Shown one piece after another: positions 1 to 55,000 of a stretch of DNA of 64,000 nucleotides. Source of the DNA: Hyphochytrium catenoides (Eukaryota; Protista; Hyphochytriomycota); the NCBI GenBank assembly GCA_900088475.1, contig FLMG01001570.1, positions 62,001 through 126,000 of the forward strand. Direction: 5' to 3'. The notes beneath the pieces are model-generated. The model was given only the letters and a program-made list of their open reading frames with translations, did not search any database and had not been told where the DNA came from. A program made the translations under genes and the position numbers. Within the stretch, counting starts at the first letter, position 1. Every line of letters begins with the position of its first letter.

Positions 1-3000
1 GTTGAAAGAAATCTTGCTAACTGCTAGTTCAAAACGTGAGGCGACGGAGGTTCCTGACGGCGTGAAGCTTGGATTTCCTTCCTCAACATCACCCTCTTCA
101 GTAATCTTTTCCATAGCAGGGACAGACTTGAACCTGGTGGCAGTCATGAGGGTTAAGTTGCCAATTTAACGTAGGGAAAGTCAGCAGATACAAGCGGCTG
201 CTGTAGTTATCCACAAGCTCATTGGTTGCACAGGGCGAAGCACATGCTCTTGCCTTTGTGTGTAAGCTACAATCTTATCTTTATTGCTTCCACTTACCTT
301 GCCACCCCACTGCTCTTATCTACAAATCTTAGGCTGTGAATAACTGGCTCCTTAACTTGCCGCGAGGGTCCAAAGAAACGATGAAGTGTAAACTGGTTGA
401 TGGCATTTTCACTAAGAGCTAAGTGCTTCAGAGCCGTAGGTTCAAGTCTTTCTCTGTGGGGTCGCAGATAAAGAGAGATGCGGATGTCCCACACATCGTC
501 ATTCTGACGCCGTTCCTCCACCTACGAAGTTGACGAGAAAGGCACGACGGCAGGGTCCATCGGGACACTCAGAGTCAGACGAGCACCACCCCGGCATTAG
601 GTTCTCCTTACCATGACATCTAAATCTGGCCGCCTTTGCAAGAGGGGAATAATCAGTCGCTTAAGCCCATCATGGACCTAAAGAAAGTCGTATCAAGGGA
701 AGGCATCGAAGCCGTAAGGATATACAGAAACAAATACATCAGCAACTGTTCACACACGACGGGCGATAGGCGCGGGAGTTTGCCTTACAGAAAAGGAGAT
801 CCTATTCAGCTGGATCTTTTGCAAGAAGTCATCCTCTCGGACGTCTCTGCCTTGGATAACAAACTTTATCCATTCCAGAAGAGCCTCCTGCAGAATTATG
901 GCCACATCGAGAGGCAGATGGAGGAGAGTTCGTGCGCAGGTTGCAGAANNNNNNNNNNNNNNNNNNNNNNNNNNNNNNNNNNNNNNNNNNNNNNNNNNNN
1001 NNNNNNNNNNNNNNNNNNNNNNNNNNNNNCCTAACCACTGGCGAGGTGAGCTCAATGGGAGCTGGAGGGTAGGCATCCAAGACCTTGGTCCAAACAGTTG
1101 CTGTGCAGGAATGCAACAAACGCTGAGTCCGGAGCTAGTGTAGCTTATTTCAACCTGAACCACTCTAGCGGGACACAATCTAGTGTTGGATAGAAAGAGT
1201 GGACCAGCACGCCACAGAGAGCCATGGCGAAACAGTAGCCACCGAGGCCCTATTGGCTGCCCCAGTCTGCTTCCCTAAATCCACGCCGTGAATACTGTGG
1301 AGTATCCACCTGACTCTTCAAACCCTCAAAGCTTCTAACACTGGGACTGCTCACTTCCCGGACTATTCTTACCAGTACCATGCGACCCCGAGAGCATCGC
1401 TTGCACGCTCTCTGATCTTTCTCTAGCAGCTTCAGAAATGCTAAGGCGGGATCCCAGATCAGGTTCCACAGACTCTCCACCTCCCATGCCCCACATGCTG
1501 CTGACTTGCTTCAAAAGATTGAACTTCTGCTGCTTACCCTCACCACCTCCCCGCACCGCTTTCAGGACGACACCTCCTAGCAGAAGATAGCAGTTGGGAC
1601 CTTAGAGTGCATCCCATACTAGCATTACGATGGACGAAACAAGAAGTTTGGAAAGAAACGATCCCGTAGGGAAAGCAAACGTCCCTATCTCCTCTACCAG
1701 AAGCTGACTTACCCTTCGGGGGCTGATCGGGTGCGGATCCATTAGAGAACGGAGGCTGGATGGACGAAAGCTGTCGCTGTTGCATAGAGAAAGTCCCGAG
1801 ATCGGAGCTCTCAGCGACTCTTCAAAGAGTAAACGATACCTAACCTGGGGAGGATAGGGAAGTTCATCGGTGCTGACCTTCAAACAATCCATTCTTTCCT
1901 GCAGGGCTGCAGTTTCCTCCTGATAACTTTTCCTGATCATCATATCTCTGGCGTGAGATCGTTCAATTTCCTGTATGATAATTTGGAGTCAAAATAACCC
2001 CTTTGTAAGGGTGGGAGCTGCAAACGAGTCCAAGGGCGAACCTTTTCTGCTCTTTCTATGTATGTTGTCTGCAGTAATAACTGCTCATTTAAGCGGTCCA
2101 TCTGACAGGGGCAAAGAGGAGTTCAGACGACCCCAGACAACATTTCAGGGAGTTTTAAGAGGCACAGAGAATTCCTGAGGTGAGCGTGAGGCGACAACTG
2201 AATGACGGCTTAGCAAGGATCTCTTTCTAAGGAAAAGAAGACAGAAGATGACGACATGATTGTTCAATGGGCTGACCTGTATGGACATAGCCCGCATCAC
2301 CTTCCTATACTTTGACAGCTGCTCGTCAAAGAAATGGAGCACGGTATCACATAGCTCCTGTTAAGAGGACAATCAAGCGTAAGTTGCTGCCATAGATGTA
2401 GTGATTAGAGTACGATTCAGCTCCACGCTCTTAGATAGTTATTCATCAAGGAGGAGACTATACGTAGCTCATCGACCAGCAAGGAAGAATCTTTGTCAGC
2501 AAGAAATAGTATATCCTCATCAATAAGGAGAGGTAGAAAGGAGAAGGAGATAGCCCTCCGCTAATTGTCCTTACCAGATCCACCTCCTTAAGCACAGAGA
2601 GGAGGTAAGCCTTTGCTTCAGTGTCATCGTCAATCGCTGGACGTTCATCTTCCGGCGATGTCAGGAGATGAACCATATCTAACTCCTCTTTGAGGTTCCT
2701 AAGTTCCTTTATATGAAGATGAAAATGGGATAAGTAGTGTTATAGAGATAGAGCTGGCTTGCTACCAGAAGACAGTGAGACAAATGGCGAGAGTTCCACG
2801 TACCTCAATGCCTCGTCGCTGCTCGTGCTCTAACTCCGACACTCTTAGTTTCAACTGCAATTACAAAATATATGAAGGAAGGCTGCTTAGTCAAGCAATC
2901 CATCATAGGCGGAGCATAAGAAAGAGATAAGGAAGGGATGAAAGATGACCAAGTTTGTAGCGACGAAGTCTAGGATAGCAAGCTTACACTATCAGCATCC

Positions 3001-5368
3001 TTCTGATAGCCAGTAGAGACATCCCATGAATCCACTAGCTCCTCATACTTCTGCGTCCAGGATGCAATGTTGGCACTCAATGTCGCCGTACCGCTCTCCA
3101 GCTCAGCTACTTGCACATCCTTTTCTACCACCTGGAACATCCAAAGTTTAGGGACTTCGAAACTATCAACGGAGAATCTAGAGCATTGCAAGCATGCACT
3201 GCCAAACCTGATCCCTCGCTGCGTCACGCTCATCTATTAGTGTTGCCACAAGCTCTCTGAGCTTCTTGTACTCCTGGTAAACATCCAACACCGAATGTAG
3301 ATCATCTTCTTCGCCATTCTCACGCTCCCGCTCGCTGGAAAGCTGTGCTATTAACCTATCCTGCTCTTGGATCTATCGGACAGATAAGAGGATAGAGGAG
3401 TTACCGGTCATGTCCTGTCCCGTTGAATTTCTTCTCCATGGGCAAAGTCACAGTTAGCCCTTTGTCTGTGTATTCTCCATTTGTACACCACTCCAGTTAA
3501 CCTCATCTTTGGCTGCGATCTCAGCCCGCCGCCTCGTAAACCATGATTCCTTTTTTTTTGCCCTTCGTTACTACCGACCTGCTGCTGAGCCTCCTCGTAT
3601 AACTGTTTGTACTTCGCCGGGGATAAATCTTTGTGCTTTCTTGGTCTATTCTCCACGTACTGTGCACCCATTCCAAAACGAATCGCAGAGAGGGTCTCGA
3701 CCAAATTCTCACTCCCTCCATGGCAAGCAATGATGAAGGTACTTTTCATCTGTCCTCCTACAGCGTCCTAAGAGGAGAGTAAGGAGTGGTAGCAGGTGCC
3801 GTAATACTGGGTGTCAGGAAAGGGTAGGGATAGAGATTGCCAAAAAGTAAAGCTGTAAACAGCTATTGATGAGAATATAATACCCCTAAAGTGACCCTGC
3901 CGTCTCATAATTTAGCATACCTGCAGCATCCGAGTCAGCTTCGAGTCCTTGTATGGGATGTTGTCTGGATGAGGTGAACTCAGTGCTTCCACTACATTCT
4001 CCAGCATCCTGAGCGACTTATGTACATAACTCACTTGGGCGTTGGACTGTGCTCCCCTAACAGGATTCTTTGGCAAGACATACAAAATAGTTGTCAGCTC
4101 ATGCTTTGCAGTCGTCCTGCGGTCTTTGCCACGTGCTGAGTACAAAACCGCAAACCGAAGTCCATGCAAGGTCCAGCTCACGGCCGAACATAGTCGCACC
4201 CACGTCGTCGAGCTTGATCCGCGCTTCTCTCTTCTCCCGGCTTGCACATTCATTGTGTGCTCTTACCTTTTCTGAGCCCGCAAGGTCAACAAAGAGAATT
4301 CGGCTTGTTTTTCGTTCCTCACTAACGATATCCCTTTGGGTCAGAGTGATGCGAAAGAGACAATGGCCCCGTGCCACATCTATGTTCTGTTTGGTGGCAT
4401 TGAGGGCTCGATTGGCCACTCCATAGCGTAAAACAGCCAGTAAGTCCTCGGCACTGGCTACCCCCACCTGCACTGCGTAATCAGTAAATGCATCCCATTT
4501 CAGGGTATATTGATCTGAACTCTATGCCTACCACTGCCGCGCCTTCCACCCAAACGCCGGTGGACGCTTCCTCTTTCAGTCGTAGGTTTGTCTGTTGAAA
4601 CAATGGACAGCGGCTAGCGGTTTAGAATGCCTTGATAAACAATGACGAGAACCTATTGCATATGAGGTTCTCACCTTGGCAGGTTGCAGTAGGTCAAATA
4701 TCTTCTCTGCATAGATCTGCACAAAGGAGGCTTGAACGATAAACTCCAGATTGCTCGATGACGTAGCAATCTCTGAAAAGATATCCAGGCAGGCTCGAGG
4801 GATTAGTCCCCGATATTCAGGATCGAATAACACCTTCACGCAAACAGAAGATGTTAGGTTAACATAATTCTTGATGATCGTTTTCGAGACTCAGCAACGT
4901 TTCTTCTAGATTTACCCCTTCTAATGTATATGTCTTGCCAGCGTTGGTCTGACCGTACAGCATGACAGCCGCCGAGTAACCATCAAAGAGACTCGTAATG
5001 TGAGGTTTCGTTGTCACTTCATAAACTTCAGCCTAGAATAACGAACGGTTAGCATCCCCTACCATTGGGCCTATATGCGTGGTGTTAATTGTTACCTGTC
5101 CAGCTTCAGGTCCAAAGGCGTGGTCAAACTCAAAGGAGGTGAAAGATGAAGCCCTCTGCTGATCGGATCCTGATAGAAACTTCACGCAAGTACCATTGCT
5201 AACCTCAATACAGTGAAATCCTGATGGCTGGTCGTCCTCATCGTCATGATGCACTGCTCGAACACGGCAACATACACGGATATTGGAGAGGGTACGATAG
5301 CTCTTGCCAAAGGAACTGGCTTTCTTTGATGCCGCAAAGGCTGCACGCTTATTCGGCTCTCGTGCCAT
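1..5368 (-). CDS. Divergent kinesin-1-like protein (multi-exon; N-terminal motor, coiled coil, tail; 3' end runs off window)
   Basis: Spliced exons give NIRVCCRVR, FEFDHAFGP, P-loop YGQTNAGKTYT (about 4932-4954), RGLIPRA, FVQIYAEKIFDLL, switch II DLAGSEK, IPYKDSKLTRMLQ and ETLSAIRFG. Coiled-coil exons follow (3373-1840), then a VVLKAVRGGG tail motif (about 1542-1571). Inclusion of exons below about 1300 in the same gene is less certain (N-gap 949-1029). Confidence 0.85.
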
Positions 5369-6025: not shown

Positions 6026-6546
6026 AGAAGGTTCAACGGATGGACGCTAACGGTAGAAATGCCCGTGAATGATGCAATTCATGTTCTACAGTCCGCTAAC
6101 TCGCAAGTGGACAAACACCGTAAGTCTTGCTGGAAGCTGCCCTCAAGGCCATAAGAGAGAGTACATGGAAGGGACAGCCTTGCGGAGTATGTTGTTGTTA
6201 ATGTTGGCAAAAAGAGGCTAATAAATGGAGACGCGAGAGCTAACAAAGTAATGCTAACGAAGATCATCGGATCTCATTGAAGATCACAGCAGCCCTCGGT
6301 CTTCCTCAACCAAGGGTTACAGAGTGTAGGAAACTTGCTTCGCACCAGCACACTGCCCAGCAGCCTCCTTTGGGCTTTACAGTCTCTTGTTATGCACTCC
6401 TAATCCTTAATCCAAACTCTTGGTAATCTTAACCAGTCGGCGACGTTGGTCAGGAGCGTCTTAGGTAGACTGCGCTTATTCCCAGTTCCAGCACTGCAAG
6501 CTACTATTGTCGAAGACCAATCGTGGCCCTTCAGGCTGCGGTGGAG

Positions 6547-9500
6547 ATGTCAGACGGTGAGAAGTGGAGCATTTAGATTTTGAACCTTCTAAACTACTTA
6601 CTTATGAGCACAATGTCGACACAGACGAGCAGCCAAAGTCACCCGATGTCAGCGATTCGGAGTCAGACGCTGGTAAATCGTATAAGGTCACCTTTAGGCC
6701 ATGTCGAGAGTTAACGCTTTGTTTCATCAACTAGATGCCGGCCGTAAGGCAGAGAAGAAAGGAAAGAAGTTGGTTGTCTCCGATGATGAAGAGAGCGACG
6801 TAGAGAAGGTAAGGGAAGTCAAGGGCGGTGATCGTTTCCATAGCATTTCATATGTGGCCTTGGTGGTTGCAGATCAAGACGAAGAAGAAAAAGAAGAAGA
6901 AGAAGAGCTCTCTTATTGAAGATGAGGCTTCTGAGAGCGAGGACGCCGAAGACCTGGGCTCTGATGAGGACGAAGACGAGGATGACGAGGATGAGAACGA
7001 CTACGTAAACGATGGTTTCGTGGTTGATGACGTAGATGAGGATCATAGTAATGACGGTATGGTGTCTGCTTTTTGCATACTGTGCGGTCGGGGCTCCCTC
7101 CTTTACTGCTGCTTTGATATCTTGGCTTCGTCTGTGACTGCCCCTGTGAGCGATATGGGCTATGGTTGACTCTATCATGGAAAATTTTGATGTCTTTAGA
7201 AAGTCGCAAGAAGCATAAGCGCCGACGGCACAGCTCTCCTGATCGGCGCTTGAAAAGGCTGAAAAGGAAGAAGGCCGAGGTAAGGAAATCGGAGGTCCAA
7301 GCCCAGTGATGCTATGGGTTTTTACTCCGACGTCTACTGCCGCATAGGAGGAGCTCGATGAGGAGGACTACGACCTTATCAAGGAAAACTTAGGAATAGA
7401 CGAAGATGAGGGCTACCGGGCTGCAGAAAGAGAAAGGCGCGAAAGAGAAAGGCGCGAAGCTGAACGGCGGGAGCGTCAGGAAGTCGTGGCATCATCAAAG
7501 AAAGACTTAGAAAAAGGGCTTTTTGGTGAAGATGACGAAGAATCAGAAGCTGAGCCTGATAAGGCTACTGCAGACCGGGATCGGGAAAGGGAACGAGAGA
7601 GAGAGAGGTCGAGAAGGAGGATGGACGAGAGAGAAGAGTTTGACAGCGATGAAATGGACGACTTCATAGTTGATGACGATGAAGAGGGAGATGGTGGTGA
7701 TGGCAGGGAGGAGCGAAGGCCCCGCCCGGCTCGGCCCAGCATGAGAAGACATGCGTATATGGGAGGACCTTCTATGGAGGAGCTAGATGAGGCAGAGGAG
7801 CTTTTTGGTGATATGGGCGACTTCTTCGCGTCAGTGCGACAAGAAAAAGAGCCAGAGCAGGATGAAGCAGAGGGAGGAGGCATGGGACAGAAAAAGAAGT
7901 CAAGTAAGGTCAATCTAGTTGTCCTGATGGTTCGCTTGTAGTTCTGAAACATGTTGCCCTGCTTTGCAACCCTTTCAGTGAGCATGAAGGCCATGTATGA
8001 GCCGAGCATTCTTAGGGAAAATCTTTGCACGGACCAAGACGAGCAGGTTAGAGTACATATTCCGGTAGACGAGTTGCCATTGTCGTCTTACACCGCGTTT
8101 CTTGGGCTAGATCCGACAAAGTGACATCCCAGAGAGGTTTCAGGTGAAAGGACAGCCACCAAAACCTATTGACCCGGAGGAGAGAAATGAAGAGGTAGAG
8201 CATAAACCGTTTCTTCCATACCCTTGTCTCTATGGGCTTACTTGCCTAGTATAAGCAGGACTCTTATTCGTATCGTTTCTTCCGTGTCCGTTCGACTTTG
8301 TCCTCCATCCACCTTTGCTTGTTGAACAAGGACGACTCTCCCTGTTTCTATATCTATCGTTCTATCCTCTTCCTGACGAAGTACGCTGGGGTGTATGTTA
8401 GGCGGAATGGATCTTTGATCAGCTTCAGTTTGAGCGAAGAAAGGACCGCGGCTCAACCGTTGCAGCAATCGAGAGCATTCTGAAGTTTTATCAGGTAGGG
8501 AGAGCCCTTGACAAAAGTGCTTGCTTAAATGTATTAGACAGTGTGCTTTGGCATCATTACTCTTGGTGGTTAAGTCGTTCTCCGACATTCTAACCTTTCA
8601 CGTTGCCTTCTGCACTAGGATGATCAATTGGAGCCAATCTTCGTTTTCACTTATCGCAAGGAATACTATCAGCCTGCAGGTGCTTAGTGAACGGCTGTTT
8701 GCGTCCTCTAATCATTGAGTAGTCTAACCTGTCCATGACCCATAACATATGGCGCAGGGCTTCGTTTGAATCACCTTTGGGATATATTAGATCTAGATGA
8801 GCGTTGGCTGGAGATGACAAAGAGGAAGAAGACGGTAGAAACAATGCTTCAGGTACGTGCAGTCTGAATATAGTAGTTGGGCCACACTTAAAGCTAGCTA
8901 TAATCTACCTCTATTAAAGGTTTCTGCTACTTCTTCTCGTGATCCCGATAGGCAAGGCTGGTTGTCTCCTGCTATTTCCCTTAAGAAATCTATCCACTCC
9001 TTCTTGCTTTCATAAGGGCGTGTCGCTTCCTCTATCCTCTCTTTCTTGCTTCCTCAAAAGCGTGTCGCTTCCTTTGTGCTAGGGTTTGAGTTTACGCGAA
9101 GAGATGGACGAGAGTCAGGAAGGAGATGCGGAACCTCCAGGTGGCAGCCAGATTGGTGAGGGACTCGTGGAAAGGCCTGAGGATACATACCGCATGATGC
9201 TAGAGTCAGCATTTACTGAGGACGAGCTTAGGGATTTAAGAGACTACTTGCAGATGGGTCAGGTATGGACCCATAGGAAGAAGGCAAGCGAGAGAGGAAG
9301 TATATTATAGGGTGACGAAGGTGAAGGCATAGAATATTAGCGCTGAACGAGAGACGAATTGAGTAGAAATAGGACTGCATCTGGTTGCCTCTCACGCGTT
9401 CGCGCTTCAAGGGAGAGACAGATACGTCCAGCACCAGGTCTCGACGACCCGTGAAGCGCGACTTCATAAAGCTGCTAAAGAAGGCGAACATCGACAAGCT

Positions 9501-18349: not shown

Positions 18350-20428
18350 CTAACCTTGAGAGCGGCTGTCGCCAAATCCTGTCAATGGGATATCATCTTT
18401 CCCATTTTCCGTCAACTCTTCGTGTCCCTCCTCTATCGACTGCATGGCCAGACAGAGGTTAATCAGTTCAGCATTTGGACTAGCTTCGACTCTTCTGGAG
18501 GGTGTTCTTACCTGCAGACGTGCAGCTAATTCATGATGTCCCATCTCAAAGGCACAACGCGAAGGACTCTTCTCCGTCTAGGGATAAAACCGTCAGACAG
18601 TGAAGAAAACAATAGATGGCATAACTTATGGAAGTCCAGACAAGACATTCGGTTTAAAGTAACTACATGCCGTGGAGTCTGGAACTGTGCAATCGCATTA
18701 TGTAAACGTACCAGAGTCAAGGAATGAATAAGCTGAGTTCCCTTTCCCCGTTTGACGAGCCACATCGCGCACTCCTTATGACCCCGAAGAGCAGCGTGAT
18801 GCAACGGATTCCTCCCGAACTGAGGAACACGAGCAGGAGGATGGGGAAGTTGGGAAAGAAAGATACGCACATTGTGTGAACAGGGGCTTGGGCTTCGGAG
18901 ACAGCTACTTACTTTATCTGTGTCACAGAGCTCTTCGTTGGTAACATGCTTCCCAACAGCTTTCAAGACGCTAACATGACCTGCCTTCGCAGCTATATGG
19001 AGAACATTGCAGCCATCCTGTGCCCGAAGGAAATGGTAAGGTACACGTATACAGGATAAAACCCATAAGGAGAAGACACGGGAAAGAAGTCTGATTAGAA
19101 TCACTCCATCGTGTACCTTGTTCCGCATATAAACTATGCGAAATGCGTCATTTACTTCGGCTATAATCTCTTCTAGTCGTGTAACGTCACCCTCTTCCGC
19201 GGCTGTGAGAAAAGCCTAACGGGTAGAAAACAATATAGAAACCTTCAGATTCAGAGCCTGTGCAGATTAGGTATAACAGTGGGATGGCCATACCTGCGTC
19301 CGCTCATGCCACTGCTTAAGAATTGCTGCGCAGCGGATCCGCTGTCTGTCATTAGCCAACTGTAAGGCTGTTTTGTTATCCTATATAGCCCCATGATTAG
19401 CCAGCGTCGACAGAATAATGGGCAAGGGTGCCACTGTTCAGTTCCAGACCCCCAGAGAGAATACACTTACATAGCTCGTGCAGTATACGTCAATGCCTTT
19501 GTGAACCAAGTACTGCACTACCTCCTTTCTGCCTTTTAAGGCCGCCCAGTGCAAGGCGGTACCTCCAAACTGCGAATGAGACGGAAACAACGTGCGGTAA
19601 GCCGTCTCAATAGTTTGAAAGAGGAGGCTACTCCATCATTCATGGATTAGAGTTCAGAGAAATCATCAAGAGGATAGGGCTAGCTCGATTAACGCTGGAC
19701 CAAGCAATTTTCAAGACATGTAGATAGGAACCAGGGGCACAGATAGGAAATAGCCATATTACCTCGTCTATCGCATTGATATTAAGCGCATTTTTGTCTT
19801 CGCCTGCTTCCTCAAGCAGGTACTGGACAACATCCAAATGACCATTGATTGCTGCCGCCGTGTGGGGCAATCTCCCAAGCTGCGATTTAAGAGGCATATT
19901 TGGAAAAAAGCATGAGAAGCAGATCCATTGGCTCTGTCTTGCCAAGGTAAGTTACCCTGTCAGGGACATCCAGCGGTACACCGTTCTGCACAAGATATTG
20001 TACTACTTCCAAATGACCATGGAAGGCCGCATACTGCAACACCGTTTGATGGTCCTGGAGTATGGCCAAAGAAGGAAAGCCCAACATCATTAGAAGCCTT
20101 GTAGAGCAAAGTGGTCATTAACGTACCGAGTCTAGCGCTTCCAGGTCAATGTTTGGCAGCGACATAAGATATTTCACTACTTCCAGCTGTCCAGCAGCAG
20201 CAGCCGCATGCAAGGCGGTGCATCCATTCTACATCAGACCAACCTGTGAGCTTCTAAAGGTCTAGGATAAAAAAGATAGAATCAAATTTCGACGCCTACC
20301 TCATTCGTGAAGTTAGGTTCAACCTTTCCCTCTTCAACAAGCTGCTTCAATGGAGCTATCCTACCACGAAAAGAGTAGCGGAGCAACTCTTCACCTGGGT
20401 CATGCGGCCACTCTTGTTGAGCCATCAT
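18350..20428 (-). CDS. Ankyrin-repeat protein (multi-exon)
   Basis: GCTALHAAAAAGQLEVVKYL, TVLQYAAFHGHLEVVQYLV, LPHTAAAINGHLDVVQYLL, NVLHIAAKAGHVSVL, RNPLHHAALRGHKECAMWLV. Confidence 0.9.
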
Positions 20429-21521: not shown

Positions 21522-24500
21522 ATGGACGACTTAGATCTTTTTGGTGCCTTTGATGGGACGCAAACTATCTCTAGCCAAGATTTACCAACACAGCCTTCCA
21601 AAAAGAGGCGTCTAGAAGATAGCGAGCCCGTGGAAGAAGAGAGGACGCTTACGGCCTCAAAGAGGAATGGCGATGAGAAGCAGGGAGCCGATGGTACATC
21701 ATCAATGCAAACAGGCACCTCCGTGAGAGTAACGGAACCGAAAGGCGCTGGAACTGAGAACTCGGGACAGCAGCCAGTGGTTGCCACCGGGACCACTGAG
21801 AAAAATGTCATTGATTTTGTTGCAGTCCCCACAGACTACAAGGGGGAAGAGACAGAAAAAGAAAAGGAGTTCGTTCCTGCCAAGACCTACAAATTCAAGC
21901 TTGATCCTTTTCAACAGAACGCTGTGAACTGCATAGAGCGGAACGAGTCGGTATTAGTTGCAGCACATACTTCCGCAGGCAAAACAGCGGTTGCTGAATA
22001 TGCCATAGCAAAATCTCTTAGAGACAAGCAGAGGGTTGTCTATACATCTCCCATCAAGGCTTTGAGTAACCAGAAGTACCGTGACCTAGCGGAAGAGTTT
22101 GAGGTTAGTTCTTTGTGAACTTGCTCCCCTCTCGACCATATAGAATGCTGACCCCGTTTCTTCATCTAGGACGTAGGTCTCATGACGGGCGATATCACTA
22201 TCAATCCGAACGCCACCTGTCTCATTATGACGACAGAGATTCTGCGTAGTATGCTCTACCGGGGGTCAGAACTCATGAGGGAGGTGGCATGGGTTATCTA
22301 CGATGAGATTCACTACATGCGAGACAAGGAGAGAGGCGTAGTGTGGGAGGAGAGCATCATCCTTCTCCCCAATAAGGTTAGATTTGTCTTCCTCTCAGCA
22401 ACCATCCCAAACTCCGGAGAATTCGCTCGCTGGATCGCACATATCAAGCATCAGCCATGCCACGTGGTATACACAGACTACCGTCCGACGCCATTGCAGC
22501 ATTACATCTTCGCCGCCGGAGGTGATGGGCTGCATTTGGTGGTGGATGAGAAGGGAAAGTTCCGCGAGGAGAACTTTCAAAAGGCAATGGCGGCGTTAGC
22601 TAGCAGTGCAGAGGACGAGATAATGCAGGATGGAGGGAAGAAGGGTCGGAAGGGGAGAAACAAAAAGAGTGGTGGCTCTGACCTTGCTCGCATCGTGAAA
22701 ATGATTATGGAGAGGAACTACGATCCGGTCATTGTCTTCAGTTTCTCTAAGCGAGACTGCGAGGCGTATGCCCTGCAGATGTCAAAGCTGGATTTCAACG
22801 ATGATGCAGCAAAGGAGATGGTTGAGCAAGTCTTCAACAACGCAATGGACTCTCTCTCTGAGGATGACAAGAAGCTCCCACAGGTTGATTCTATTCTTCC
22901 TTTGCTGAAGAGAGGTATCGGCATCCACCATGGCGGTTTGCTTCCTATCCTCAAGGAAGTCATTGAGATCCTCTTCGCGGAGGGCCTTCTAAAGTGCCTT
23001 TTTGCCACGGAAACGTTTGCTATGGGTATCAATATGCCTGCCAAAACAGTGGTGTTCACCCAATGCAGGAAGTTTGACGGCAAGGACTTCCGCTGGATCA
23101 ACGCAGGAGAATATATTCAGATGAGCGGTCGAGCAGGCCGAAGAGGGTTGGACGCGCGAGGTATTGTCATTCAGATGTTGGATGAGAAAATGGAACCTGC
23201 AGTTGCGAAGAGTATTCTCTACGGGCAAGCGGACCCGCTATTCTCGAGTTTTCATCTTGGCTATAACATGTTGCTCAACCTACTGAGAGTGGAGGATGCA
23301 GACCCAGAGTTTATGATCAGGCAGTCTTTCCATCAGTTTCAAAATGAGCAGACAGCTCCAGGGTTAGAAGAAGAGCTGCAAAATTTGGAGGAGCAACTGA
23401 AGGCCATTCAGATAGAGGCGGAGGACAAGGTGGCTGAGTACTACCACGTGTCCAAGCAAATGACCAAGACCGCTGCCGAGATGCAAGCTTTCATTGCCAA
23501 GCCAGAACATTGTGTACCCTTCCTTAATCCGGGCCGACTGGTGCGTATTGAGGACGAAGAGCTCGCGTGGGGATGGGGCGTCATCGTAAACTTCCAAAAG
23601 AAAAATGCTCCGGACAACAAGGGCCTCAGCAGCGATGGGGTGGGCTCTCTTTACGTCGTTCATGTTCTGCTAAACACCGACGACTCTACACCACCCAAGC
23701 CATGCCCTCCTGGGGAAAAAGGGGAGATGAAGGTCGTACCACTGGTTTTGAAGATGCTGAAGAGCATCAGCTCCCTTCGCGTGTATATTCCAAAGGATCT
23801 AAGGTCAGCAGAGAACCGACAAGCGGTTTGGAAGAGCCTGAAAGAGATACAGAAAAGGTTTCCGGACGGCTTTCCTCTTCTGGATCCTTTAGAAGACATG
23901 CAAATTGAAGATGACAACTTCAAAAAGCTTATTCTTCGAGCTGAAGCCCTGCAGAGACGCATGGTAGAAAGCGAGATAGGCAAGGCTCAAGATATCGACG
24001 TCAGAATAAAGCGCTACGACGAGAAGGTGGAGCTGGAGGCCAAGATCAAGCATCTTAGAAAGGAGATCAAGCAGACTAAAAGTATGGTCCTTCGCGACAA
24101 TCTGAAGCACATGAAGCGTGTTCTCAGGCGACTTGGCCATACCGACAGTGAGAACGTCGTGCAACTAAAGGGACGAGTGGCTTGCGAGATCAGCACTGCG
24201 GACGAACTTCTCATCACGGAGCTGATTTTCAACAATGTATTTAACGAGCTTTCGGTGGATCATAGCGTTGCCCTCCTGAGCTGTTTAGTTCATTTGGGCA
24301 AAGGAGATGAGTCAGTGAGAGTTAGAGACGAGCTATCAGGACCCTTCCGGCAACTGCAGGAAGCTGCCAGACATGTGGCCAAGGTCTCCTTAGACTGCAA
24401 AATTGCTATCGACGTCGACGAATACGTCAACCAGTTTACTCCTGACATGATGGAAGTCACACTGGCATGGTGTCGAGGTGCCAAGTTCAGCGAAATCTGT

Positions 24501-24680
24501 AAAATGACAGATATTTTTGAAGGCACCATTATCCGTTGCATTCGGCGGTTGGATGAGCTGCTGAAGCAGCTGTCATCAGCAGCGCATGCCATCGGGAATG
24601 TGGAGCTGGAGAAGAAGTTCTTAGAGGGCTCGAGCAAGATCAAGCGTGACATCATCTTCGCAGCTTCACTCTATCTATAA
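21522..24680 (+). CDS. MTR4: Nuclear exosome RNA helicase MTR4 (SKIV2L2), single intron about 22104-22169
   Basis: [40 protein letters not shown]/arch (WGWGVIVNF), DSHCT ending [13 protein letters not shown]. Confidence 0.97.
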
Positions 24681-25376: not shown

Positions 25377-26661
25377 ATGGGCAATCTCTGCGCCGGAATC
25401 CGGATATCTGGACATGGATCAACCGTCTCAGACCTAGATAGGGAGATTACGCAGATACTGCGTAAGAAGAAGGCTATTCTGGACAGTTCTGATGAGAAAC
25501 ATCGGATAATGAGCTTCAACAAGGTCATTCTTCAATTTAGCACTATCCAGCGAGCGATGCGAAAGATCAAGGATGCCTTCAATTGCTTAGACGTGGTAAG
25601 CCCCAGGGCGACATCTCTCAGACTCAAACTTTTTGCCAAGTGACTCCTAATTTCTGATCCATGCAGGACCAAAAGGGCTCGATTGACTACGTTGGATTGA
25701 GATCATGCCTTAAGCTTTTGGGAACCGACATTTCTGACGATGTTATGAAGCAAATATTTGCTGAGTCAGGTGAGCTCCTCATTCAAGTCCTTAGGGACCC
25801 TTTCCTCATGTCTTCAGTTCGCGCCAACGGCTACTGTTGTCTTCTTCTTTGCGCTCTTGCCATAGCAGTCTATTGGGATCCCTTCCAAAGCTAACTTCTG
25901 CGCTGTTCTTTGCAGACTTCACTTCAAAGGGAGCTCTATCCTACAAGGAGTTTGTGGTCTCCCTCGCTATTGTCTATTTAATGGGCGCGGTACCCTCGCT
26001 GTCAGGGCCAGATTCTGTGAAAGCGACATCTGAACACAACAAAGCGACCGCTTCAGACAGAAACAGGCACCATACTAAGGACCCAACCGGACAAACAGCC
26101 GCAAGCACAACCTTACCAAACAATGAGCCAAGGGCATCGACCGCATGGACGCAGGAACGCCAGCCATCAAGTAATGGCCCCAGCACCCTCCCAACTATTA
26201 ACACCAACTCCGGTACAAAGGAGCCAGACATTCAGCCGCTTCCATCCCCTGTACGAGAGGCTCATAGAAGAGGCTCGAACATTATCAGTGACAACAAAGT
26301 CATCCTCCAGAAGGCTTTCCATCTCTTGGTTGACGCGTATCTCTTTTTTGATAAGGACGCTAGCGGGACTATCTCTAAAGATGAGATGCGAGCTGTTCTC
26401 ATTGAAGATAAAAGCAAACCAAGATCGGCGGAGTTAGAGGCAACAGCGCAGTTTTTGACCCAACATAGATGGGAAGAGATGGACTGGAACAAGGATGGTA
26501 CCATTACCTTTAAAGAGTTTCTCTTTGCCTTCGAGTCCTGGGTTTATGACGAAGAAGATCAGGAGGAGGAGATTTCCACGCAACCATCGGCCGGTGAAGG
26601 CTACAAGCACTCAGAGGAAACTCAAGCAAACAGCATTTTACGAAAACCGAAAAAGACATAA
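25377..26661 (+). CDS. Calmodulin-like EF-hand protein, CML21/22-like, with N-terminal MGNLC acylation motif
   Basis: 3 exons; SFNKVILQF, DVDQKGSIDY, YKEFVVSLAIVYL, FFDKDASGTISKDEM, RWEEMDWNKDGTITFKEFLFAFESWV match the plant CML21 pattern as recalled. Confidence 0.85.
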
Positions 26662-28002: not shown

Positions 28003-28839
28003 ATGGAGGATCCATCGCCAAGGTCTTTTGGCAGCTCAGATGAGCGGTTTGAGACCTCCAGAGCAGTGGCAAAGCAAGGAGGCTATGCTAGTTCTGGAGA
28101 TGAGAGATTCGAGACTCCAAGGAATGCTACCTCTCGATCCTACCACTCTGAGAAGGACTATAAGACTCCAAGAGATGGTGGACAAGTATCAGGAGAAGAT
28201 GAAAGTGACTCTTACCACACTGGGAGAGAAGACAAGCACGCCTATGATGTGCCCATCATGCAAGTGGGCTATGTGCCCACAGCCTCTTATCCTCATGTGT
28301 CTAGTTACGGCTACCCTACTGTCCCAGTCATGGGCTACTCAGCTGATGCTACATATTTGGGGACCCCTTACGTTGTTCACGGCCCCTCGACGGTTGCGGG
28401 AGCTCCTGCCTACGGCGCTGGCTGGGGGCAGGGCGCGGTGTACTATCCAGTCGCTCAAAGCAAACAAGCACCAATTAGTAGGAAGGAAGAGAAGCGGACA
28501 GTAGAAGACATCTTCTCCCTGACGCGACACAACCGACACGAGGAGGTAGAAGCGCTGCTTTCTTCAGGCATTCCAGTAAGCGTTAGAGACCAGTATGGGA
28601 ACACGGTCCTTTCAATTGCCTGTCAGAACGGATTGAAGCGTCTCGCGAAGCTTGCACTCCGACGAGGGGCAGATATCAATTCGCAGAACTATAAGGGCAA
28701 CACACCGCTGCACTTCTGCTTTATGTATGGTTATGGCGATACTTTAGGGGAATATTTAATATCGAAAGGCGCCGATACACAGGTTCGGAACCTTGATGGG
28801 CTAACGTGCTTCGAAGTCGCGTCAGGTGCCCAAGAATAA
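28003..28839 (+). CDS. C-terminal ankyrin-repeat protein with Tyr/Gly/Pro-rich linker (possible upstream exon near 27460-27610)
   Basis: DIFSLTRHNR, DQYGNTVLSIACQNGLKRLAKLALRRGADINSQNYKGNTPLHFCFMYGY. A splice acceptor at about 27985 suggests a 5' exon. Confidence 0.85.
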   Translation: MEDPSPRSFGSSDERFETSRAVAKQGGYASSGDERFETPRNATSRSYHSEKDYKTPRDGGQVSGEDESDSYHTGREDKHAYDVPIMQVGYVPTASYPHVSSYGYPTVPVMGYSADATYLGTPYVVHGPSTVAGAPAYGAGWGQGAVYYPVAQSKQAPISRKEEKRTVEDIFSLTRHNRHEEVEALLSSGIPVSVRDQYGNTVLSIACQNGLKRLAKLALRRGADINSQNYKGNTPLHFCFMYGYGDTLGEYLISKGADTQVRNLDGLTCFEVASGAQE

Positions 28840-37884: not shown

Positions 37885-38649
37885 TCACGTGGACTTCTTT
37901 GGTGCGATTAGAAACGTAACGGTGACTGTTTGGCTGATAACCTGGTCAGAGGAGAGAATAGGGGTTGACTTTGCGCTGGCGGCAAACCTCCCATACGACT
38001 CAGCCGCATGGAAGTGCGACCCATCCTGTGAAGCTATCACAGTCTGAATTCCGGTCACTGTGTAGCCCAAAGGTGAAAGCATTTTCAGCGCGGTCGACTG
38101 AGCGTTGAGCATCGCTTCGCCCATGAGGTCATCCCGGAGGGTCATGTACATTTGAGGAGACGCCGTATATGTGACGGAGTCCACTGAGTTAACCCCCAAC
38201 TTGACAGCCGTGTCAATGACCTTTGAGGCAAGTTCAAGCTTTGATGTCTCGACCCTTAGATTGTTCGACACCTGAAATTCAGGTTCCGGCCTAGCTTCGT
38301 CTTTGCCTGGATAAACATATGCATTTCGGTCACGAATGCTAAGGGCCGACGTCACAATTTCGGATTCTTCCTTGAGGCCGAGGTCTTTAATTCCTTGAAT
38401 GACCGCGTTCATAAGCTCGGAGTTCTTTTCCAGAGCGGCATACGCACTTCTGTCTGCGACCACAACCCCGAACTCCATCCTTAAAAGGTTGGGTTTGACG
38501 GTGGATGAAGCTGTACCGACAACGGTTATGGTGCTCTCCTTGACTCCGCATTGTTGGCCCTCTTGACCCACAGCGGAGCTTGTAGAGACAAGCAGACATC
38601 CCAGAAGGAAGCCGACCAAAGACATCCTTGTCCATGTGCGCAGTGACAT
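37885..38649 (-). CDS. SIMPL / DUF541 (YggE/BP26-like) secreted protein, intronless
   Basis: Signal peptide; TITVVGTAS..VKPN, ALEKNSELMNAVIQGIK, FQVSNNLRV, VIDTAVKLGVNSVDSVTY, C-terminal ISQTVTVTF. Confidence 0.88.
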   Translation of the reverse strand: MSLRTWTRMSLVGFLLGCLLVSTSSAVGQEGQQCGVKESTITVVGTASSTVKPNLLRMEFGVVVADRSAYAALEKNSELMNAVIQGIKDLGLKEESEIVTSALSIRDRNAYVYPGKDEARPEPEFQVSNNLRVETSKLELASKVIDTAVKLGVNSVDSVTYTASPQMYMTLRDDLMGEAMLNAQSTALKMLSPLGYTVTGIQTVIASQDGSHFHAAESYGRFAASAKSTPILSSDQVISQTVTVTFLIAPKKST

Positions 38650-52011: not shown

Positions 52012-55000
52012 CTATCGATTCTGCAAGATTTCAAGGATCAACGTCCGGCTGAGGATGTGAAAGCCTTCGGTCTTAGTAACCGTGTCAAAATGTCTGCAGA
52101 TGTAAGATGTCCAAGGGGTTGGCGAAGCGTGTCAGACACAGTTGATAGAGCTCTCAGTCGATGTCAAGTCCACACAAGAACCATGTAATAAAGAAGAGGT
52201 GGAAGCAAAGGGACACACCTTATAATAAAGCTCAAGCACTGCTCTTTAATGCGCAAGGCATGCAAATCATCTGCTGTCTGTAGCATGTAGGAGACGTTTT
52301 CAATCGTCATGAGACCAGGAAGCTGAGACTCACACAAGGTCTGCCGGAAGGTTAGCAGGTAAAACCTCTTAATTCTCGGTATTATCATACGTAAAAGGAA
52401 TGGATTGGTACTACCTTGAGTCTGTCAATAGTGTAGAGGTCGGCGGCGATGTACAGCTCTATCACATTCTCTGGCTGGATATCCACCTGGTCCGTGTAGA
52501 GATACTGTAGGATTGCAAGGAAGATTGGCGCTCGCATATTTGGGATGACAATTTCTCCTTCTCTACTTTCTCGCATTCCTAAACGGAGTAGCCATTAGTC
52601 AGCAACATAGCTCACCGCTCAGGGACCCGGTGATAAATTGGGTACAAGGTTAAGGCTGTGCTCATTTCTCGTCCGTCTGTCCCTCGCTCATGGTGTCCTG
52701 CTGATTAACCACTCCCCTACCTCTTTTTGACTAGCCCTGAAGTCGGTTGAGTCGCTCAGATTCCTCTTCATTCTCTTTCGCACCGCCCTTCAGTGCTGAA
52801 GCCACACTCAGTCTGTCATTATCACCTTCTCCGACCCTTTGAAAGACTCGAAGTGCGACTCATGTCTCTCTATTTATCACGTGCTACAATCTATGCAATA
52901 ATTACGCTTTTTCTCTTACCTGATGAGAACATCGCCCGGAAGTGTTCGCAGCGTACAGCTAAGAATGCCTTGTGAGCATAGATGTTCCTTCCCTCAACTA
53001 TAAAGGTAACGTCACTGAAGTCGCTATTATCGACGAGGCGGCCAATATCTTCCAGGTATGACGACTCGACGACGGTCCTATTACGTGGAAACCCGATGTC
53101 TAGCCACACCGAGAGTGGCGCGAGTCAGCCACGGCAAAGATGTAACTAAAGTGTAGTTGCACACTTGCAAATAGACGATGAAATCTGGGAGGACACAGAG
53201 CTAAAGGTAGTCATAAAGGAAAGGGAAAGTTGCCACAGGGCGAGTTGAAGGAGATAACAGGGCCATGTAAGCTTACCGACTAGTGCAGTGGTGTGCTCAT
53301 TGTAAGATGCGACCTTGACGACGTGTTTTCCTCTTAGAGCCTCAACCACCTTGGGCTGTGTAACCTTTGCAGTGTCATTGTGACCAAGCTTGCCGTGATC
53401 ACCGTTGCCCCATGTGAAGACAACTCCTTCATCTAGATGCGCACGATAGCGTCAGTGGTCTGAGATGATGCGATGAACGTCCATCTTTTTGTCGCTCTTG
53501 GTAGAAAGGTCCTTGTTGCCGCACTCAAGCTTTGACCCCGGAAGCAAAAGTCCCTCTGCCTCTCCACTTCACAAGTAGCTTACCTGTGAGTGCCACAGTG
53601 TGACTCCATCCGCATGTAATCTGAACGACCCTTTGATCCCTCAGTCTCTCAACTAGGGTAGGGACCATCTGGTTGACCTTGTCGCCATGACCCAGCTGGC
53701 CATGTTCTCCACCGCCCCAAGTGAAGATGTGGCCTTCCTCTTGGAAATTAGACAACGTTAGTCCGCGAAGCCATATGCGTCACAAAAATCAAGACCAGTG
53801 CTGCTGTGTCTACCGGTACGATATGATAACTTGTCATTCAACTTCGATTGAGCCAGGTTTTAACTTATCACATACCAGTGATAGCAGCTGTGTGAAAGCC
53901 TCCACAGGAGACCTGCTTCACCTTACGCCCTACGAGCTCCTCCACCCTTAATGGCAGGTGCTGGTTTCTCTCAGAGCTATGACCCAGCCGGCCGAACTTC
54001 CCCTCTCCCCACGTAAACAGCTCTCCGGCATCTACGGCGAGTGTTTCATAGCAATATAAATGCAGGAAGTGGGTTGAATGAGACCAAAAGAAGGGGCTTT
54101 GCCATGGAATTAGCATTACCGGATACCACAGCTGTATGGAATCCACATGCCGAGATTTGTCGACAAGTAACCCCTGCTAGGCCGTCTACACGAGCTGGCA
54201 GAGAGAAATGTCCTGGAGTGGCAAAGTTAGTGGTTCACAAATCTATGCTGCTGACCGTACAGCACACAGTAAAATGATGACCATGGGATATCTCGCCAGC
54301 ATGACCTGGGCAGCAAAAAGACACAGGGTTGGAGAGATAGACAGAATAGGAGCGCTGGGTGTGCAAAGTAAGGGGAAGAAAGGAAGGACCCGTCTAGCAC
54401 TTTACCATCGACATCTCCATGACCCGAAACGCCATTTTCCCTATCTCCCCAAGTGTAGACAGTGGCATCGTCTGAGAGCTGGTGTCAGTAGCATTTGCAA
54501 CAGATGTATGGATAAGAAAAGGCTGCTGTGGCCTGAAAGGTGCAGACAAGAACAGGACCAGGAGAAGGCCCAAGCGGGACAGCAATGTCATACCGAGCAG
54601 TACTACGGTGTGGCGGCTCCCGCATGCTACTTGCTCCACTTTCTTGCCCTTCAGCGCTTCAACCAGGCAGGGTGTAGAGTGTCCACTTTCATTTCCATGT
54701 CCTAGCTTTCCATACATTCCTCCACCCCAAGTATAGAGCTCACCAGTGTCTTTTACATTAGAAGAGGTCCCGTGGTAGGAGCGGAAGAGATAATTTGATG
54801 AGAGTCGGAGTCTATCTAGGCGAAAGGTTAGGGAGAAGCCTCAGAGTAGGAGTGTCCGATTAGGGAGACCGAAATGCGGAAGCCCTGCTTGAGACATTAG
54901 CCGGAGGAGGAAGAGATAGCGAGTGTCGGACCTGTTACTGCCGCGGTGTGATAGCTCCCACACGTCACCTGCTTGACCCTTTTGCCTCTGAGCGATTCAA

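What the first reader, a model, noticed from the sequence alone, without database searches (positions are those of the whole stretch)
3660..5290. Kinesin motor with coordinated degeneration of catalytic motifs: candidate pseudo-kinesin
Seen in sequence: switch I reads N-I-D-V-A-R-G-H (about 4362-4387) instead of NxxSSRSH. The adenine-pocket RxRP is RVRA. The alpha4 relay ExxxINxSL is QVSYVHKSL, CSPS is CHGG and ETLSTLRF is ETLSAIRF. The P-loop (GQTNAGKT), switch II (DLAGSE) and microtubule-binding L12/alpha5 (IPYKDSKLT) are kept, and the motor exons splice without stops. Established: the second switch I serine coordinates Mg2+/gamma-phosphate and SSR is near-invariant in active kinesins; non-motile kinesin derivatives exist (yeast Smy1, Vik1/Cik1). 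Inference: a maintained, nucleotide-binding but hydrolysis-impaired kinesin acting as a microtubule tether or as a heterodimeric regulator of a canonical kinesin-1.
Basis: partly seen in the sequence, partly recalled or inferred. Interest (0 to 1): 0.75.

Follow-up and report, generated by a model that had tools for sequence, protein, structure and literature searches.

The report
Kinesin gene with disabled ATP switch
A water-mould-like microbe keeps an intact gene of at least 21 exons for a kinesin-1-type motor whose ATP-splitting 'switch I' serines are gone, so it probably holds on to microtubules rather than walks; crippled kinesins of this general kind are already known elsewhere.

Summary
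On the minus strand (ATG at 5368) lies a multi-exon kinesin gene whose switch I reads NIDVARGH (4386-4363) instead of NxxSSRSH. RxRP reads RVRA, and alpha4 and alpha6 are altered as described. The P-loop, switch II, the switch I arginine and L12/alpha5 are intact.

The gene is much larger than the flagged span. It has at least 21 in-frame GT-AG exons from 5368 to 298 and runs towards the window's start.

Its tail is collinear with a kinesin family found only in peronosporalean and pythialean oomycetes: kinesin-1-like motor, stalk, 'LRSVRGGG' box, three tail boxes, then a ZZ finger. All sampled members of that family have canonical catalytic motifs.

The window's motor is a fast-evolving outlier:
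- It is 41% identical to the family, against 85% within it.
- Its tree branch is about 6 times the median.
- It keeps 62 of 89 near-invariant columns, against a median of 88.

Single changes at five of its altered positions cut KIF5A ATPase or cause disease. An impaired, microtubule-binding adaptor or very slow motor is therefore the best reading, but this is inferred.

No orthologue shares the changes. RNA support is two short metatranscriptome contigs. The heterodimer idea is untested. Other windows of this genome already carry notes on other 'pseudo-kinesins'. Verdict: new member of a known kind, modest interest.

The parts
298..5368 (-). Visible extent of the gene: at least 21 exons, ATG at 5368-5366; the 3' end is unresolved and probably lies beyond the window start
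   Evidence: Exon chain built from GT-AG sites, all in frame. It is collinear with the family HMM from the motor to the tail. Exons show codon-position composition, introns do not.
3579..5368 (-). Motor domain plus neck linker and neck. Exons 1-7: 5368-5096, 5032-4916, 4833-4675, 4591-4532, 4467-4267, 4067-3921, 3767-3579
   Evidence: Exons 2, 3, 5 and 6 each exceed the gathering score of Pfam PF00225. Best PDB matches are kinesin-1: 1goj for exons 3, 5 and 7, and 2y5w then 1goj for exon 6.
5255..5266 (-). N4 adenine-pocket motif RVRA (residues 35-38) in place of RxRP
   Evidence: Translation. The position is Pro in 60 of 66 related motors.
4931..4954 (-). P-loop GQTNAGKT (118-125). The Walker A pattern GxxxxGKT is intact; Asn at the fourth position is unusual
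4363..4386 (-). Switch I NIDVARGH (231-238). The three serines of SSRSH are replaced by V, A and G; N, R and H are kept
   Evidence: Alignment to 1goj, 2kin and 3wrd. Each serine is conserved in 65 of 66 motors.
4270..4287 (-). Switch II DLAGSE (264-269), fully canonical
4011..4037 (-). L11/alpha4 segment QVSYVHKSL (281-289). E to Q, N to H and further changes relative to (L)xEAxxINKSL
   Evidence: The same sequence is read in an independent metatranscriptome contig covering 3920-4064.
3933..3959 (-). L12/alpha5 microtubule-binding motif IPYKDSKLT (307-315), kept apart from a conservative R to K
3675..3728 (-). beta8 to alpha6: ACHGG...ETLSAIRF (CSxSS and ETxSTLRF altered)
   Evidence: Covered by metatranscriptome contig 3603-3753, which differs at one synonymous site (3720).
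3591..3656 (-). Neck linker and start of the neck coiled coil (VENRPRKHKDLSPAKYKQLYEE)
   Evidence: Exon 7 matches NcKin residues 294-354 at E = 6.6e-10, including 'LSPAELKQ'.
1713..3372 (-). Coiled-coil stalk exons: 3372-3208, 3131-2988, 2854-2804, 2706-2575, 2515-2459, 2357-2301, 2101-2042, 1970-1845, 1776-1713
   Evidence: In-frame chain. Weak collinear HMM hits. Several junctions are provisional: two unusual donors (GTCTCC, GTTCGC) and alternative splice sites around 1970-1776.
1542..1565 (-). LKAVRGGG box in exon 1576-1373, the counterpart of the family's LRSVRGGG. It recalls the 'IRPIRGGG' tail motif of Phytophthora kinesin-1
1033..1092 (-). Tail box A, WTKVLDAYPPAPIELTSPVV (exon 1100-1030), which abuts the assembly gap
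   Evidence: tblastn with the P0010 and P0013 tails; alignments.
949..1029 (.). Run of 81 N inside the gene. About 19 family-conserved residues ('RLIxSMPExGR') would fall here
298..887 (-). Tail boxes B and C, in exons 887-789 (LLEWIKFVIQGRDVR), 677-612 (LKRLIIPLLQRRPDLDV) and 521-298 (WDIRISLYLRPH ... HRFFGPS ... EPV)
   Evidence: tblastn E = 5e-4 against the whole window. HMM hits at E = 0.0027 and 0.00025 in collinear order. Alignment.

Best explanation
This is a real, maintained gene. It encodes a fast-evolving member of an oomycete-type family of kinesin-1-like proteins: N-terminal motor, kinesin-1-like neck, coiled-coil stalk, an 'LRSVRGGG' box, three family-specific tail boxes and, in the oomycete members, a ZZ zinc finger.

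This organism is a stramenopile related to the water moulds. Its motor keeps what is needed to fold, to bind nucleotide (P-loop, switch II, the switch I Arg that pairs with the switch II Glu) and to bind microtubules (L12/alpha5). It has lost the three switch I serines, which position Mg2+ and the attacking waters. It has also lost the adenine-pocket proline, and L11/alpha4 is altered.

Inferred mechanism: a dimer that still binds ATP or ADP and microtubules but hydrolyses very slowly. It would act as a nucleotide-state-dependent microtubule anchor or adaptor, or at best a very slow motor, for whatever the conserved tail binds.

Shown: the sequence changes, the gene's integrity, the family relationship and the accelerated divergence. 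Inferred: impaired hydrolysis, dimerisation and the anchoring role.
For: - Motifs and their alignment to solved kinesin-1 structures.
- A chain of 21 in-frame GT-AG exons, with 0 in-frame stops against 35 and 53 off-frame, about 35 stops per frame in the introns, and coding periodicity in exons only.
- The tail is collinear with Pythium and Phytophthora proteins. The family of 38 proteins has the architecture PF00225 plus PF00569 and canonical motifs throughout.
- The motor is 41% identical to the family, against 85% within it. Tail box B is 36% against 77%.
- The terminal branch is 2.7-3.1 against a median of about 0.5.
- It keeps 62 of 89 near-invariant columns, against a median of 88.
- In KIF5A, the single changes M198T, S202N, S203C and E251K reduce microtubule-stimulated ATPase to 5-30% of wild type, and N256S is disease-causing. 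The window protein is changed at all five homologous positions (PMC5498027).
- S202 bonds with T92 at the Mg2+ site (PMC4383081).
- Two metatranscriptome contigs at 99% identity or more cover exons 6 and 7. One stops matching at the predicted exon 6 donor, and the only difference is synonymous.
Against: - No biochemical data exist. P-loop, switch II and the Arg-Glu pair are intact, so some hydrolysis may remain. KIF5A S203C keeps about 30% activity.
- The whole protein is diverged, not only the catalytic site. Part of the divergence may simply reflect a distant or fast-evolving lineage.
- No orthologue with the same changes was found, so constraint (dN/dS) could not be measured.
- RNA evidence is two 151-nt contigs from one environmental sample and does not cover switch I.
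- Placement beside the family in the motor tree has no statistical support.
- The ZZ finger and the 3' end lie outside the window.
Confidence: 0.5

Rival explanations
1. It is still a working, perhaps slow, plus-end motor. The unusual switch I is compensated by backbone or water-mediated contacts, and the changes reflect lineage-specific tuning rather than loss of function.
For: - P-loop, switch II, the switch I Arg, L12/alpha5, the neck linker Asn and the kinesin-1-like neck are all kept.
- Single Ser mutants of KIF5A retain measurable microtubule-stimulated ATPase.
- KIF7 shows that low ATPase can still be functionally used (PMC12919046).
Against: - Three serines, each conserved in 65 of 66 related motors and in 143 of 150 best hits, are all replaced.
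- Changes are also present at M198, E251 and N256 equivalents, each of which is individually deleterious in KIF5A.
Confidence: 0.25
2. It is the non-catalytic partner head of a heterodimer with a canonical paralogue, in the manner of Vik1/Cik1 with Kar3 or KIN-B with KIN-A. It would supply microtubule binding or regulation to an active motor.
For: - A kinesin-1-like neck coiled coil is retained.
- Precedents exist (PMC4338441; PMC10987093).
- Other notes report many kinesin genes in this genome.
Against: - No candidate partner was identified. Look-ups with the family motor and with Phytophthora kinesin-1 found nothing, although a blank there is uninformative.
- The oomycete family members appear as single canonical genes, not as pairs.
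- The gene keeps its own full tail, unlike a mere accessory head.
Confidence: 0.12
3. It is a gene in decay or a flawed model: a recently inactivated pseudogene, or an assembly or annotation artefact whose intact frame is partly a product of my choice of splice sites.
For: - There is an N gap inside the gene (949-1029).
- Several stalk junctions use unusual donors (GTCTCC, GTTCGC, GTCGGT) and were chosen to keep the frame.
- Expression evidence is minimal.
Against: - The seven motor exons are independently fixed by homology and have no stop or frameshift despite about 60% divergence.
- The tail boxes remain recognisable and in order.
- Codon periodicity holds in motor, stalk and tail exons.
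- An environmental transcript matches at 99% or more, with one synonymous change, and ends at a predicted splice site.
Confidence: 0.08

Closest known systems
Oomycete kinesin-1-like proteins with tail boxes and a ZZ finger (e.g. Pythium insidiosum GLD99392.1, Pythium oligandrum Poli38472_006609, Phytophthora infestans 'kinesin heavy chain, putative', Plasmopara halstedii 'kinesin family member 3')
   Same: N-terminal motor, neck, stalk, a 'L(R/K)(S/A)VRGGG' box and tail boxes A, B and C in the same order. They give the highest motor identity (41-43%).
   Different: All sampled members have RFRP, GQTG(T/S)GKT, SSRSH and the canonical alpha4, and are 79-90% identical to each other in the motor. 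The window protein is a long-branch outlier. Its ZZ finger cannot be seen because it would lie outside the window.
Conventional kinesin-1 (Neurospora NcKin, PDB 1goj; KIF5; Phytophthora cactorum 'kinesin heavy chain')
   Same: 1goj is the best solved-structure match for exons 3, 5 and 7 and the second best for exon 6. The match includes the neck linker and the start of the neck coil. There is an RGGG-type tail motif.
   Different: The switch I serines, the N4 proline and alpha4 are altered. The tail continues into family-specific boxes instead of ending after the IAK-type motif. Membership of the kinesin-1 clade was not tested against outgroups.
Non-motile or highly divergent kinesins: KIF7/Costal2, KIF26A/B, VAB-8, yeast Smy1
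   Same: The kinesin fold is retained, with reduced or absent motor chemistry, and is used as a scaffold or tether (PMC12919046; PMC2867816).
   Different: They have independent origins in other kinesin families and other eukaryotic groups. No orthology exists. Here P-loop and switch II are fully canonical, and the defect is centred on switch I.
Non-catalytic partner heads: Trypanosoma KIN-B (with KIN-A) and yeast Vik1/Cik1 (with Kar3)
   Same: A degenerate motor-like head, joined by a coiled coil, that could pair with an active head (PMC10987093; PMC4338441).
   Different: [quoted passage not shown] The window protein keeps most of these. No partner is known.
Odontella aurita (diatom) A0A7S4J4X1, a 1,677-residue protein with two tandem degenerate kinesin motors
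   Same: It is stramenopile and kinesin-1-like, with degenerate switch I (NIDLSRSH and NMDKNRLH). It shares 'NID' and 'LENVV.ALS..H' with the window protein and groups with it in one tree.
   Different: It has two motors in one chain, a degenerate switch II (DLAGHQ, ELAGFD) and no tail boxes. The grouping is a join of two long branches and may be an artefact.

Membership tests
Kinesin superfamily (motor domain, Pfam PF00225) | Sequence match to the motor-domain profile | tested here: met
   Exons 2, 3, 5 and 6 score 43, 41, 50 and 37 bits against a cutoff of 29.3. Exon 7 is weak.
Kinesin superfamily (motor domain, Pfam PF00225) | P-loop GxxxxGK(T/S) | tested here: met
   GQTNAGKT at 4954-4931.
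Kinesin superfamily (motor domain, Pfam PF00225) | Switch I NxxSSRSH | tested here: not met
   NIDVARGH. N, R and H are kept and the three serines are lost.
Kinesin superfamily (motor domain, Pfam PF00225) | Switch II DxxGxE | tested here: met
   DLAGSE at 4287-4270.
Kinesin-1 | N-terminal motor followed by a kinesin-1-type neck linker and neck coiled coil | tested here: met
   Exon 7 aligns to NcKin 294-354 at E = 6.6e-10; rat and human kinesin-1 come next.
Kinesin-1 | Placement inside the kinesin-1 clade in a superfamily phylogeny | tested here: inconclusive
   The trees contain only kinesin-1-like best hits with no named outgroups. The query is a long branch with unsupported placement.
Kinesin-1 | Autoinhibitory IAK-type tail motif | tested here: inconclusive
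   LKAVRGGG resembles Phytophthora kinesin-1 'IRPIRGGG' and the family's 'LRSVRGGG'. Its function is untested.
Oomycete kinesin-1-like / tail-box / ZZ family | Collinear tail boxes A, B and C after the RGGG box | tested here: met
   tblastn E = 5e-4. HMM hits at E = 0.19, 0.0027 and 0.00025 in the expected order and on the same strand.
Oomycete kinesin-1-like / tail-box / ZZ family | ZZ zinc finger (PF00569) and the conserved domain after it | not testable with these tools
   It would lie beyond coordinate 1 of the window. Nothing ZZ-like is seen in the last 300 bases.
Oomycete kinesin-1-like / tail-box / ZZ family | Motor groups with the family in a tree | tested here: inconclusive
   It is sister to the family once other long branches are removed, but with support 0. 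It gives the highest pairwise identity (41%).
Catalytically inactive ('pseudo') kinesins as a functional class | Loss of residues required for hydrolysis | tested here: met
   The switch I serines are lost, together with M198, E251 and N256 equivalents. For the effect of single changes in KIF5A.
Catalytically inactive ('pseudo') kinesins as a functional class | Measured absence of microtubule-stimulated ATPase and motility | not testable with these tools
   This needs recombinant protein.

The most novel reading that the evidence does not exclude
The gene would represent an independent, selectively maintained origin of a 'nucleotide-binding but non-hydrolysing' kinesin inside the kinesin-1 lineage of stramenopiles. 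In this reading ATP binding alone gates microtubule attachment of a conserved, structurally unassigned tail module. Together with the diatom tandem dead-motor protein, it would point to a wider, undescribed radiation of kinesin-1-derived pseudo-motors in stramenopiles.
Probability: 0.15. Interest if true: 0.5.

Novelty: new member of a known kind. Interest (0 to 1): 0.3.

Why it matters
If the motor is indeed hydrolysis-impaired, this is a natural experiment. An otherwise complete kinesin-1-type machine (P-loop, switch II, salt-bridge arginine, microtubule interface, neck, tail) lacks only the switch I serines and a few relay residues. It also has canonical relatives in oomycetes for direct comparison. 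That would help to separate nucleotide binding from hydrolysis in microtubule attachment.

The work also draws attention to an unstudied oomycete kinesin family whose tail has no structural match. Some members of that family belong to plant pathogens. The practical consequence is small, because dead or non-motile kinesins are already well documented.

Tried and rejected
- **Word search with exon 5 alone:** nothing found, because the length filter excludes full-length proteins.
- **Exhaustive HMMER search with exon 5:** 576 kinesins, none above 49% identity, no hit to the window's own protein and no relative with VARGH.
- **Metagenome locus scan with exon 5:** only generic kinesins at 47% identity or less. 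None carries the family tail.
- **P0096 (Radiomyces, 'SDRGH'):** considered as a relative and rejected, because it is not among the best full-length matches.
- **Profile word search with family tails plus the window's tail exons:** only Peronosporales and Pythiales again.
- **Fold of the tail boxes:** pLDDT 69, with no significant match in the PDB or the ESM Atlas. A PB1 or p62-like reading of the tail is therefore unsupported.
- **Look-ups of earlier notes by sequence for a canonical paralogue:** blank, which is uninformative.
- **Alternative canonical switch I exon in the introns:** none found.
- the spliced protein has no reference, so I did not submit it whole to structure prediction, the Atlas or the database searches. 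These steps were left out rather than typing the sequence.
- **dN/dS:** not possible without an orthologue.
Full report
**What is there.** The flagged span lies on the minus strand. Reading the reverse complement and joining GT-AG sites gives seven exons that start at an ATG at 5368 and encode a complete kinesin motor with neck. Exons 2, 3, 5 and 6 each pass Pfam's gathering score for the kinesin motor domain on their own.

Phmmer against all PDB chains aligns the exons to kinesin-1 structures. Neurospora kinesin-1 (1goj) is the best hit for exons 3, 5 and 7 and the second best for exon 6. The match of exon 7 runs through the neck linker into the neck coil ('DLSPAKYKQLYEE' against 'ELSPAELKQML', E = 6.6e-10).

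**The observation.**
- RVRA at 5266-5255
- GQTNAGKT at 4954-4931
- NIDVARGH at 4386-4363
- DLAGSE at 4287-4270
- QVSYVHKSL at 4037-4011
- IPYKDSKLT at 3959-3933
- ACHGG at 3728-3714
- ETLSAIRF at 3698-3675

The PDB alignments place NIDVARGH opposite N-x-x-S-S-R-S-H. This is not ordinary variation. 143 of the 150 best hits of an exhaustive HMMER search carry an exact SSRSH. In a 66-motor alignment each of the three serines, the Met before the motif and the alpha4 Asn is conserved in 65 of 66. The codons GTG GCA need several base changes from any serine pair, so a single sequencing error cannot explain them. No alternative exon with a canonical switch I lies nearby.

One qualification applies. 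Of the near-invariant positions in the four nucleotide motifs, 16 of 20 are kept, by my own hand count from the column list. Overall, 62 of 89 near-invariant motor positions are kept. The P-loop, switch II and the switch I arginine are intact. The damage is therefore specific to the switch I serines and the N4 proline, within a motor that is diverged generally, most of all in L11/alpha4 and beta8-alpha6.

**The gene is much larger than flagged.** tblastn with the best full-length matches showed that their tails also hit the window, downstream on the same strand. A profile of the family hits the minus strand collinearly from the motor to about position 320.

I could chain 21 exons from 5368 to 298, all with GT-AG introns of 59-272 nt and all in frame. 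An 81-N assembly gap (949-1029) lies inside the gene. The model has no in-frame stop, against 35 and 53 in the other two frames, while the introns have about 35 stops in every frame. Exons show the usual codon-position bias (G-rich first base, A-rich second base) and introns are flat.

Some stalk junctions are provisional because they use unusual donors. The 3' end is unresolved and probably lies beyond the window's start.

**Expression.** Only one public RNA run held any of the sequence, a plant-associated metatranscriptome. Two 151-nt contigs at 99% identity or more lie on 3603-3753 (exon 7) and 3920-4064 (exon 6). The second has six further letters that do not continue into the intron. That is what a read crossing the predicted exon 6/7 junction would show.

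These contigs independently confirm the altered alpha4, L12 and ACHGG/ETLSAIRF segments. The single difference (3720 A>G) is a synonymous His codon change. Switch I itself is not covered. This support is thin.

**What family.** My spliced model is most similar to Pythium insidiosum GLD99392.1, at 38% over 459 residues by BLAST and 41% over the aligned motor columns. Related sequences follow, together with the canonical Phytophthora 'kinesin heavy chain'.

A word search with the Pythium tail recovered 38 proteins, all from Peronosporales, Pythiales or Lagenidium. Nearly all have the architecture kinesin motor plus ZZ finger and are about 1,100-1,200 residues long. A second search with a profile that included the window's own tail exons found the same set only.

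The window protein is collinear with this family through several features:
- a stalk segment
- an 'LKAVRGGG' box (family 'LRSVRGGG'; compare 'IRPIRGGG' at the end of Phytophthora kinesin-1)
- box A, 'W..YPPAPIELTSPVV'
- box B, 'LLEWIKFVIQGRDVR ... LKRLIIPLLQRRPDLDV ... WDIRISLYLRPH'
- box C, 'HRFFGPS ... EPV'

All sampled family members have RFRP, GQTG(T/S)GKT, SSRSH, DLAGSE and the canonical alpha4.

**Rate.** The window motor is 41% identical to the family, whereas family members are 85% identical to each other. For tail box B the figures are 36% and 77%.

In maximum-likelihood trees the window's terminal branch is 2.7-3.1 substitutions per site, against a median of about 0.5. Its placement is unsupported. 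It joins another long branch in one tree (SH-aLRT 84, flagged as long-branch attraction). Once other long branches are removed it sits beside the family with support 0. Orthology therefore rests mainly on the tail.

**Functional inference.** In human KIF5A, single substitutions at the homologous positions reduce microtubule-stimulated ATPase from 6.8 per second as follows:
- M198T to 1.8
- S202N to 0.35
- S203C to 2.0
- E251K to 0.9

N256S is also disease-causing (PMC5498027). The window protein carries changes at all five positions (M to Q, S to V, S to A, E to Q, N to H). In kinesin-1, S202 bonds with T92 at the Mg2+ site, and SSRSH and DLAGSE are described as universally conserved (PMC4383081).

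From my own knowledge, not tested here: the equivalent serine in myosin (S237) is essential. Severe impairment of hydrolysis is therefore likely, but it is not shown.

The retained P-loop, the Arg-Glu pair, L12/alpha5, the neck and the tail argue that the protein still binds nucleotide and microtubules, dimerises and engages its tail partner.

I tried to learn what the tail does. An AlphaFold model of boxes A-C (pLDDT 69) has no significant match in the PDB or the ESM Atlas.

**Comparison with known cases.** Non-motile or degenerate kinesins are well known:
- KIF7/Cos2 and KIF26 (PMC12919046)
- Smy1, Cos2 and VAB-8 as divergent outliers (PMC2867816)
- Trypanosome KIN-B, an inactive motor paired with KIN-A (PMC10987093)
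- Vik1/Cik1 with Kar3 (PMC4338441)

A diatom protein (Odontella aurita A0A7S4J4X1) with two tandem degenerate kinesin-1-like motors turned up in my own search. It shares 'NID' in switch I and 'LENVV.ALS..H' in alpha4 with the window protein, but it has no tail boxes. I found no paper on the oomycete kinesin-ZZ family.

Earlier notes of this scan list several other candidate pseudo-kinesins in other windows of the same genome. They also describe the organism as an unannotated stramenopile related to water moulds. My homologue taxonomy agrees with that description.

**Limits.**
- The spliced protein has no reference, so I did not fold it or search with it whole.
- I could not search the rest of the genome for a canonical paralogue.
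- No orthologue exists for dN/dS.

**Verdict.** It is a new member of a known kind, of modest interest.

Noticed in passing
window 949-1029: An 81-N assembly gap lies inside the kinesin gene, exactly where about 19 family-conserved tail residues ('RLIxSMPExGR') are expected. The true sequence there is unknown.
   Followed up: partly
P0111 (Odontella aurita A0A7S4J4X1): This diatom protein of 1,677 residues has two tandem kinesin motors, both with degenerate switch I and II (NIDLSRSH/DLAGHQ and NMDKNRLH/ELAGFD). It shares 'LENVV.ALS..H' with the window protein. This could be a second stramenopile lineage of dead kinesin-1-like motors, or convergence.
   Followed up: partly
oomycete family proteins P0013, P0166-P0206: The family has a strongly conserved, undescribed C-terminal module after the ZZ finger ('CRRxEQxA...PELFEL.R.HIC.D...IVK.GLHP.IRARLV.QLGA.AS.R....LKTEWF'). 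Gene models lacking the motor are annotated 'Sequestosome-1'. The tail-box fold has no structural match.
   Followed up: partly
window 3720: The environmental transcript differs from the window by one base. It is a synonymous His codon change (CAT to CAC) inside the ACHGG segment.
   Followed up: yes
window 21522-24680 (+): An MTR4/SKI2-type exosome RNA helicase (DEAD, Helicase_C, MTR4 stalk, beta-barrel, DSHCT) is split over two ORFs, presumably by an intron.
   Followed up: partly
window 25837-26661 (+), 28003-28839 (+), 18526-19128 (-), 37885-38649 (-): Ordinary neighbours: an EF-hand protein, two ankyrin-repeat ORFs and a SIMPL/DUF541 protein.
   Followed up: partly
window 53200-53430 (-): The translation reads 'WGNGDHGKLGH', which I recognise from memory as an RCC1-like repeat (no search was run). 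The nearby exact 'SSRSH' match is in another frame and is a chance hit, not a second kinesin.
   Followed up: partly
window 6500-8000 (+): Upstream of the kinesin gene, on the other strand, are ORFs rich in acidic and lysine runs (e.g. 'DEDEDEDDEDEND', 'KKKKKKKK'). They were not identified.
   Followed up: no
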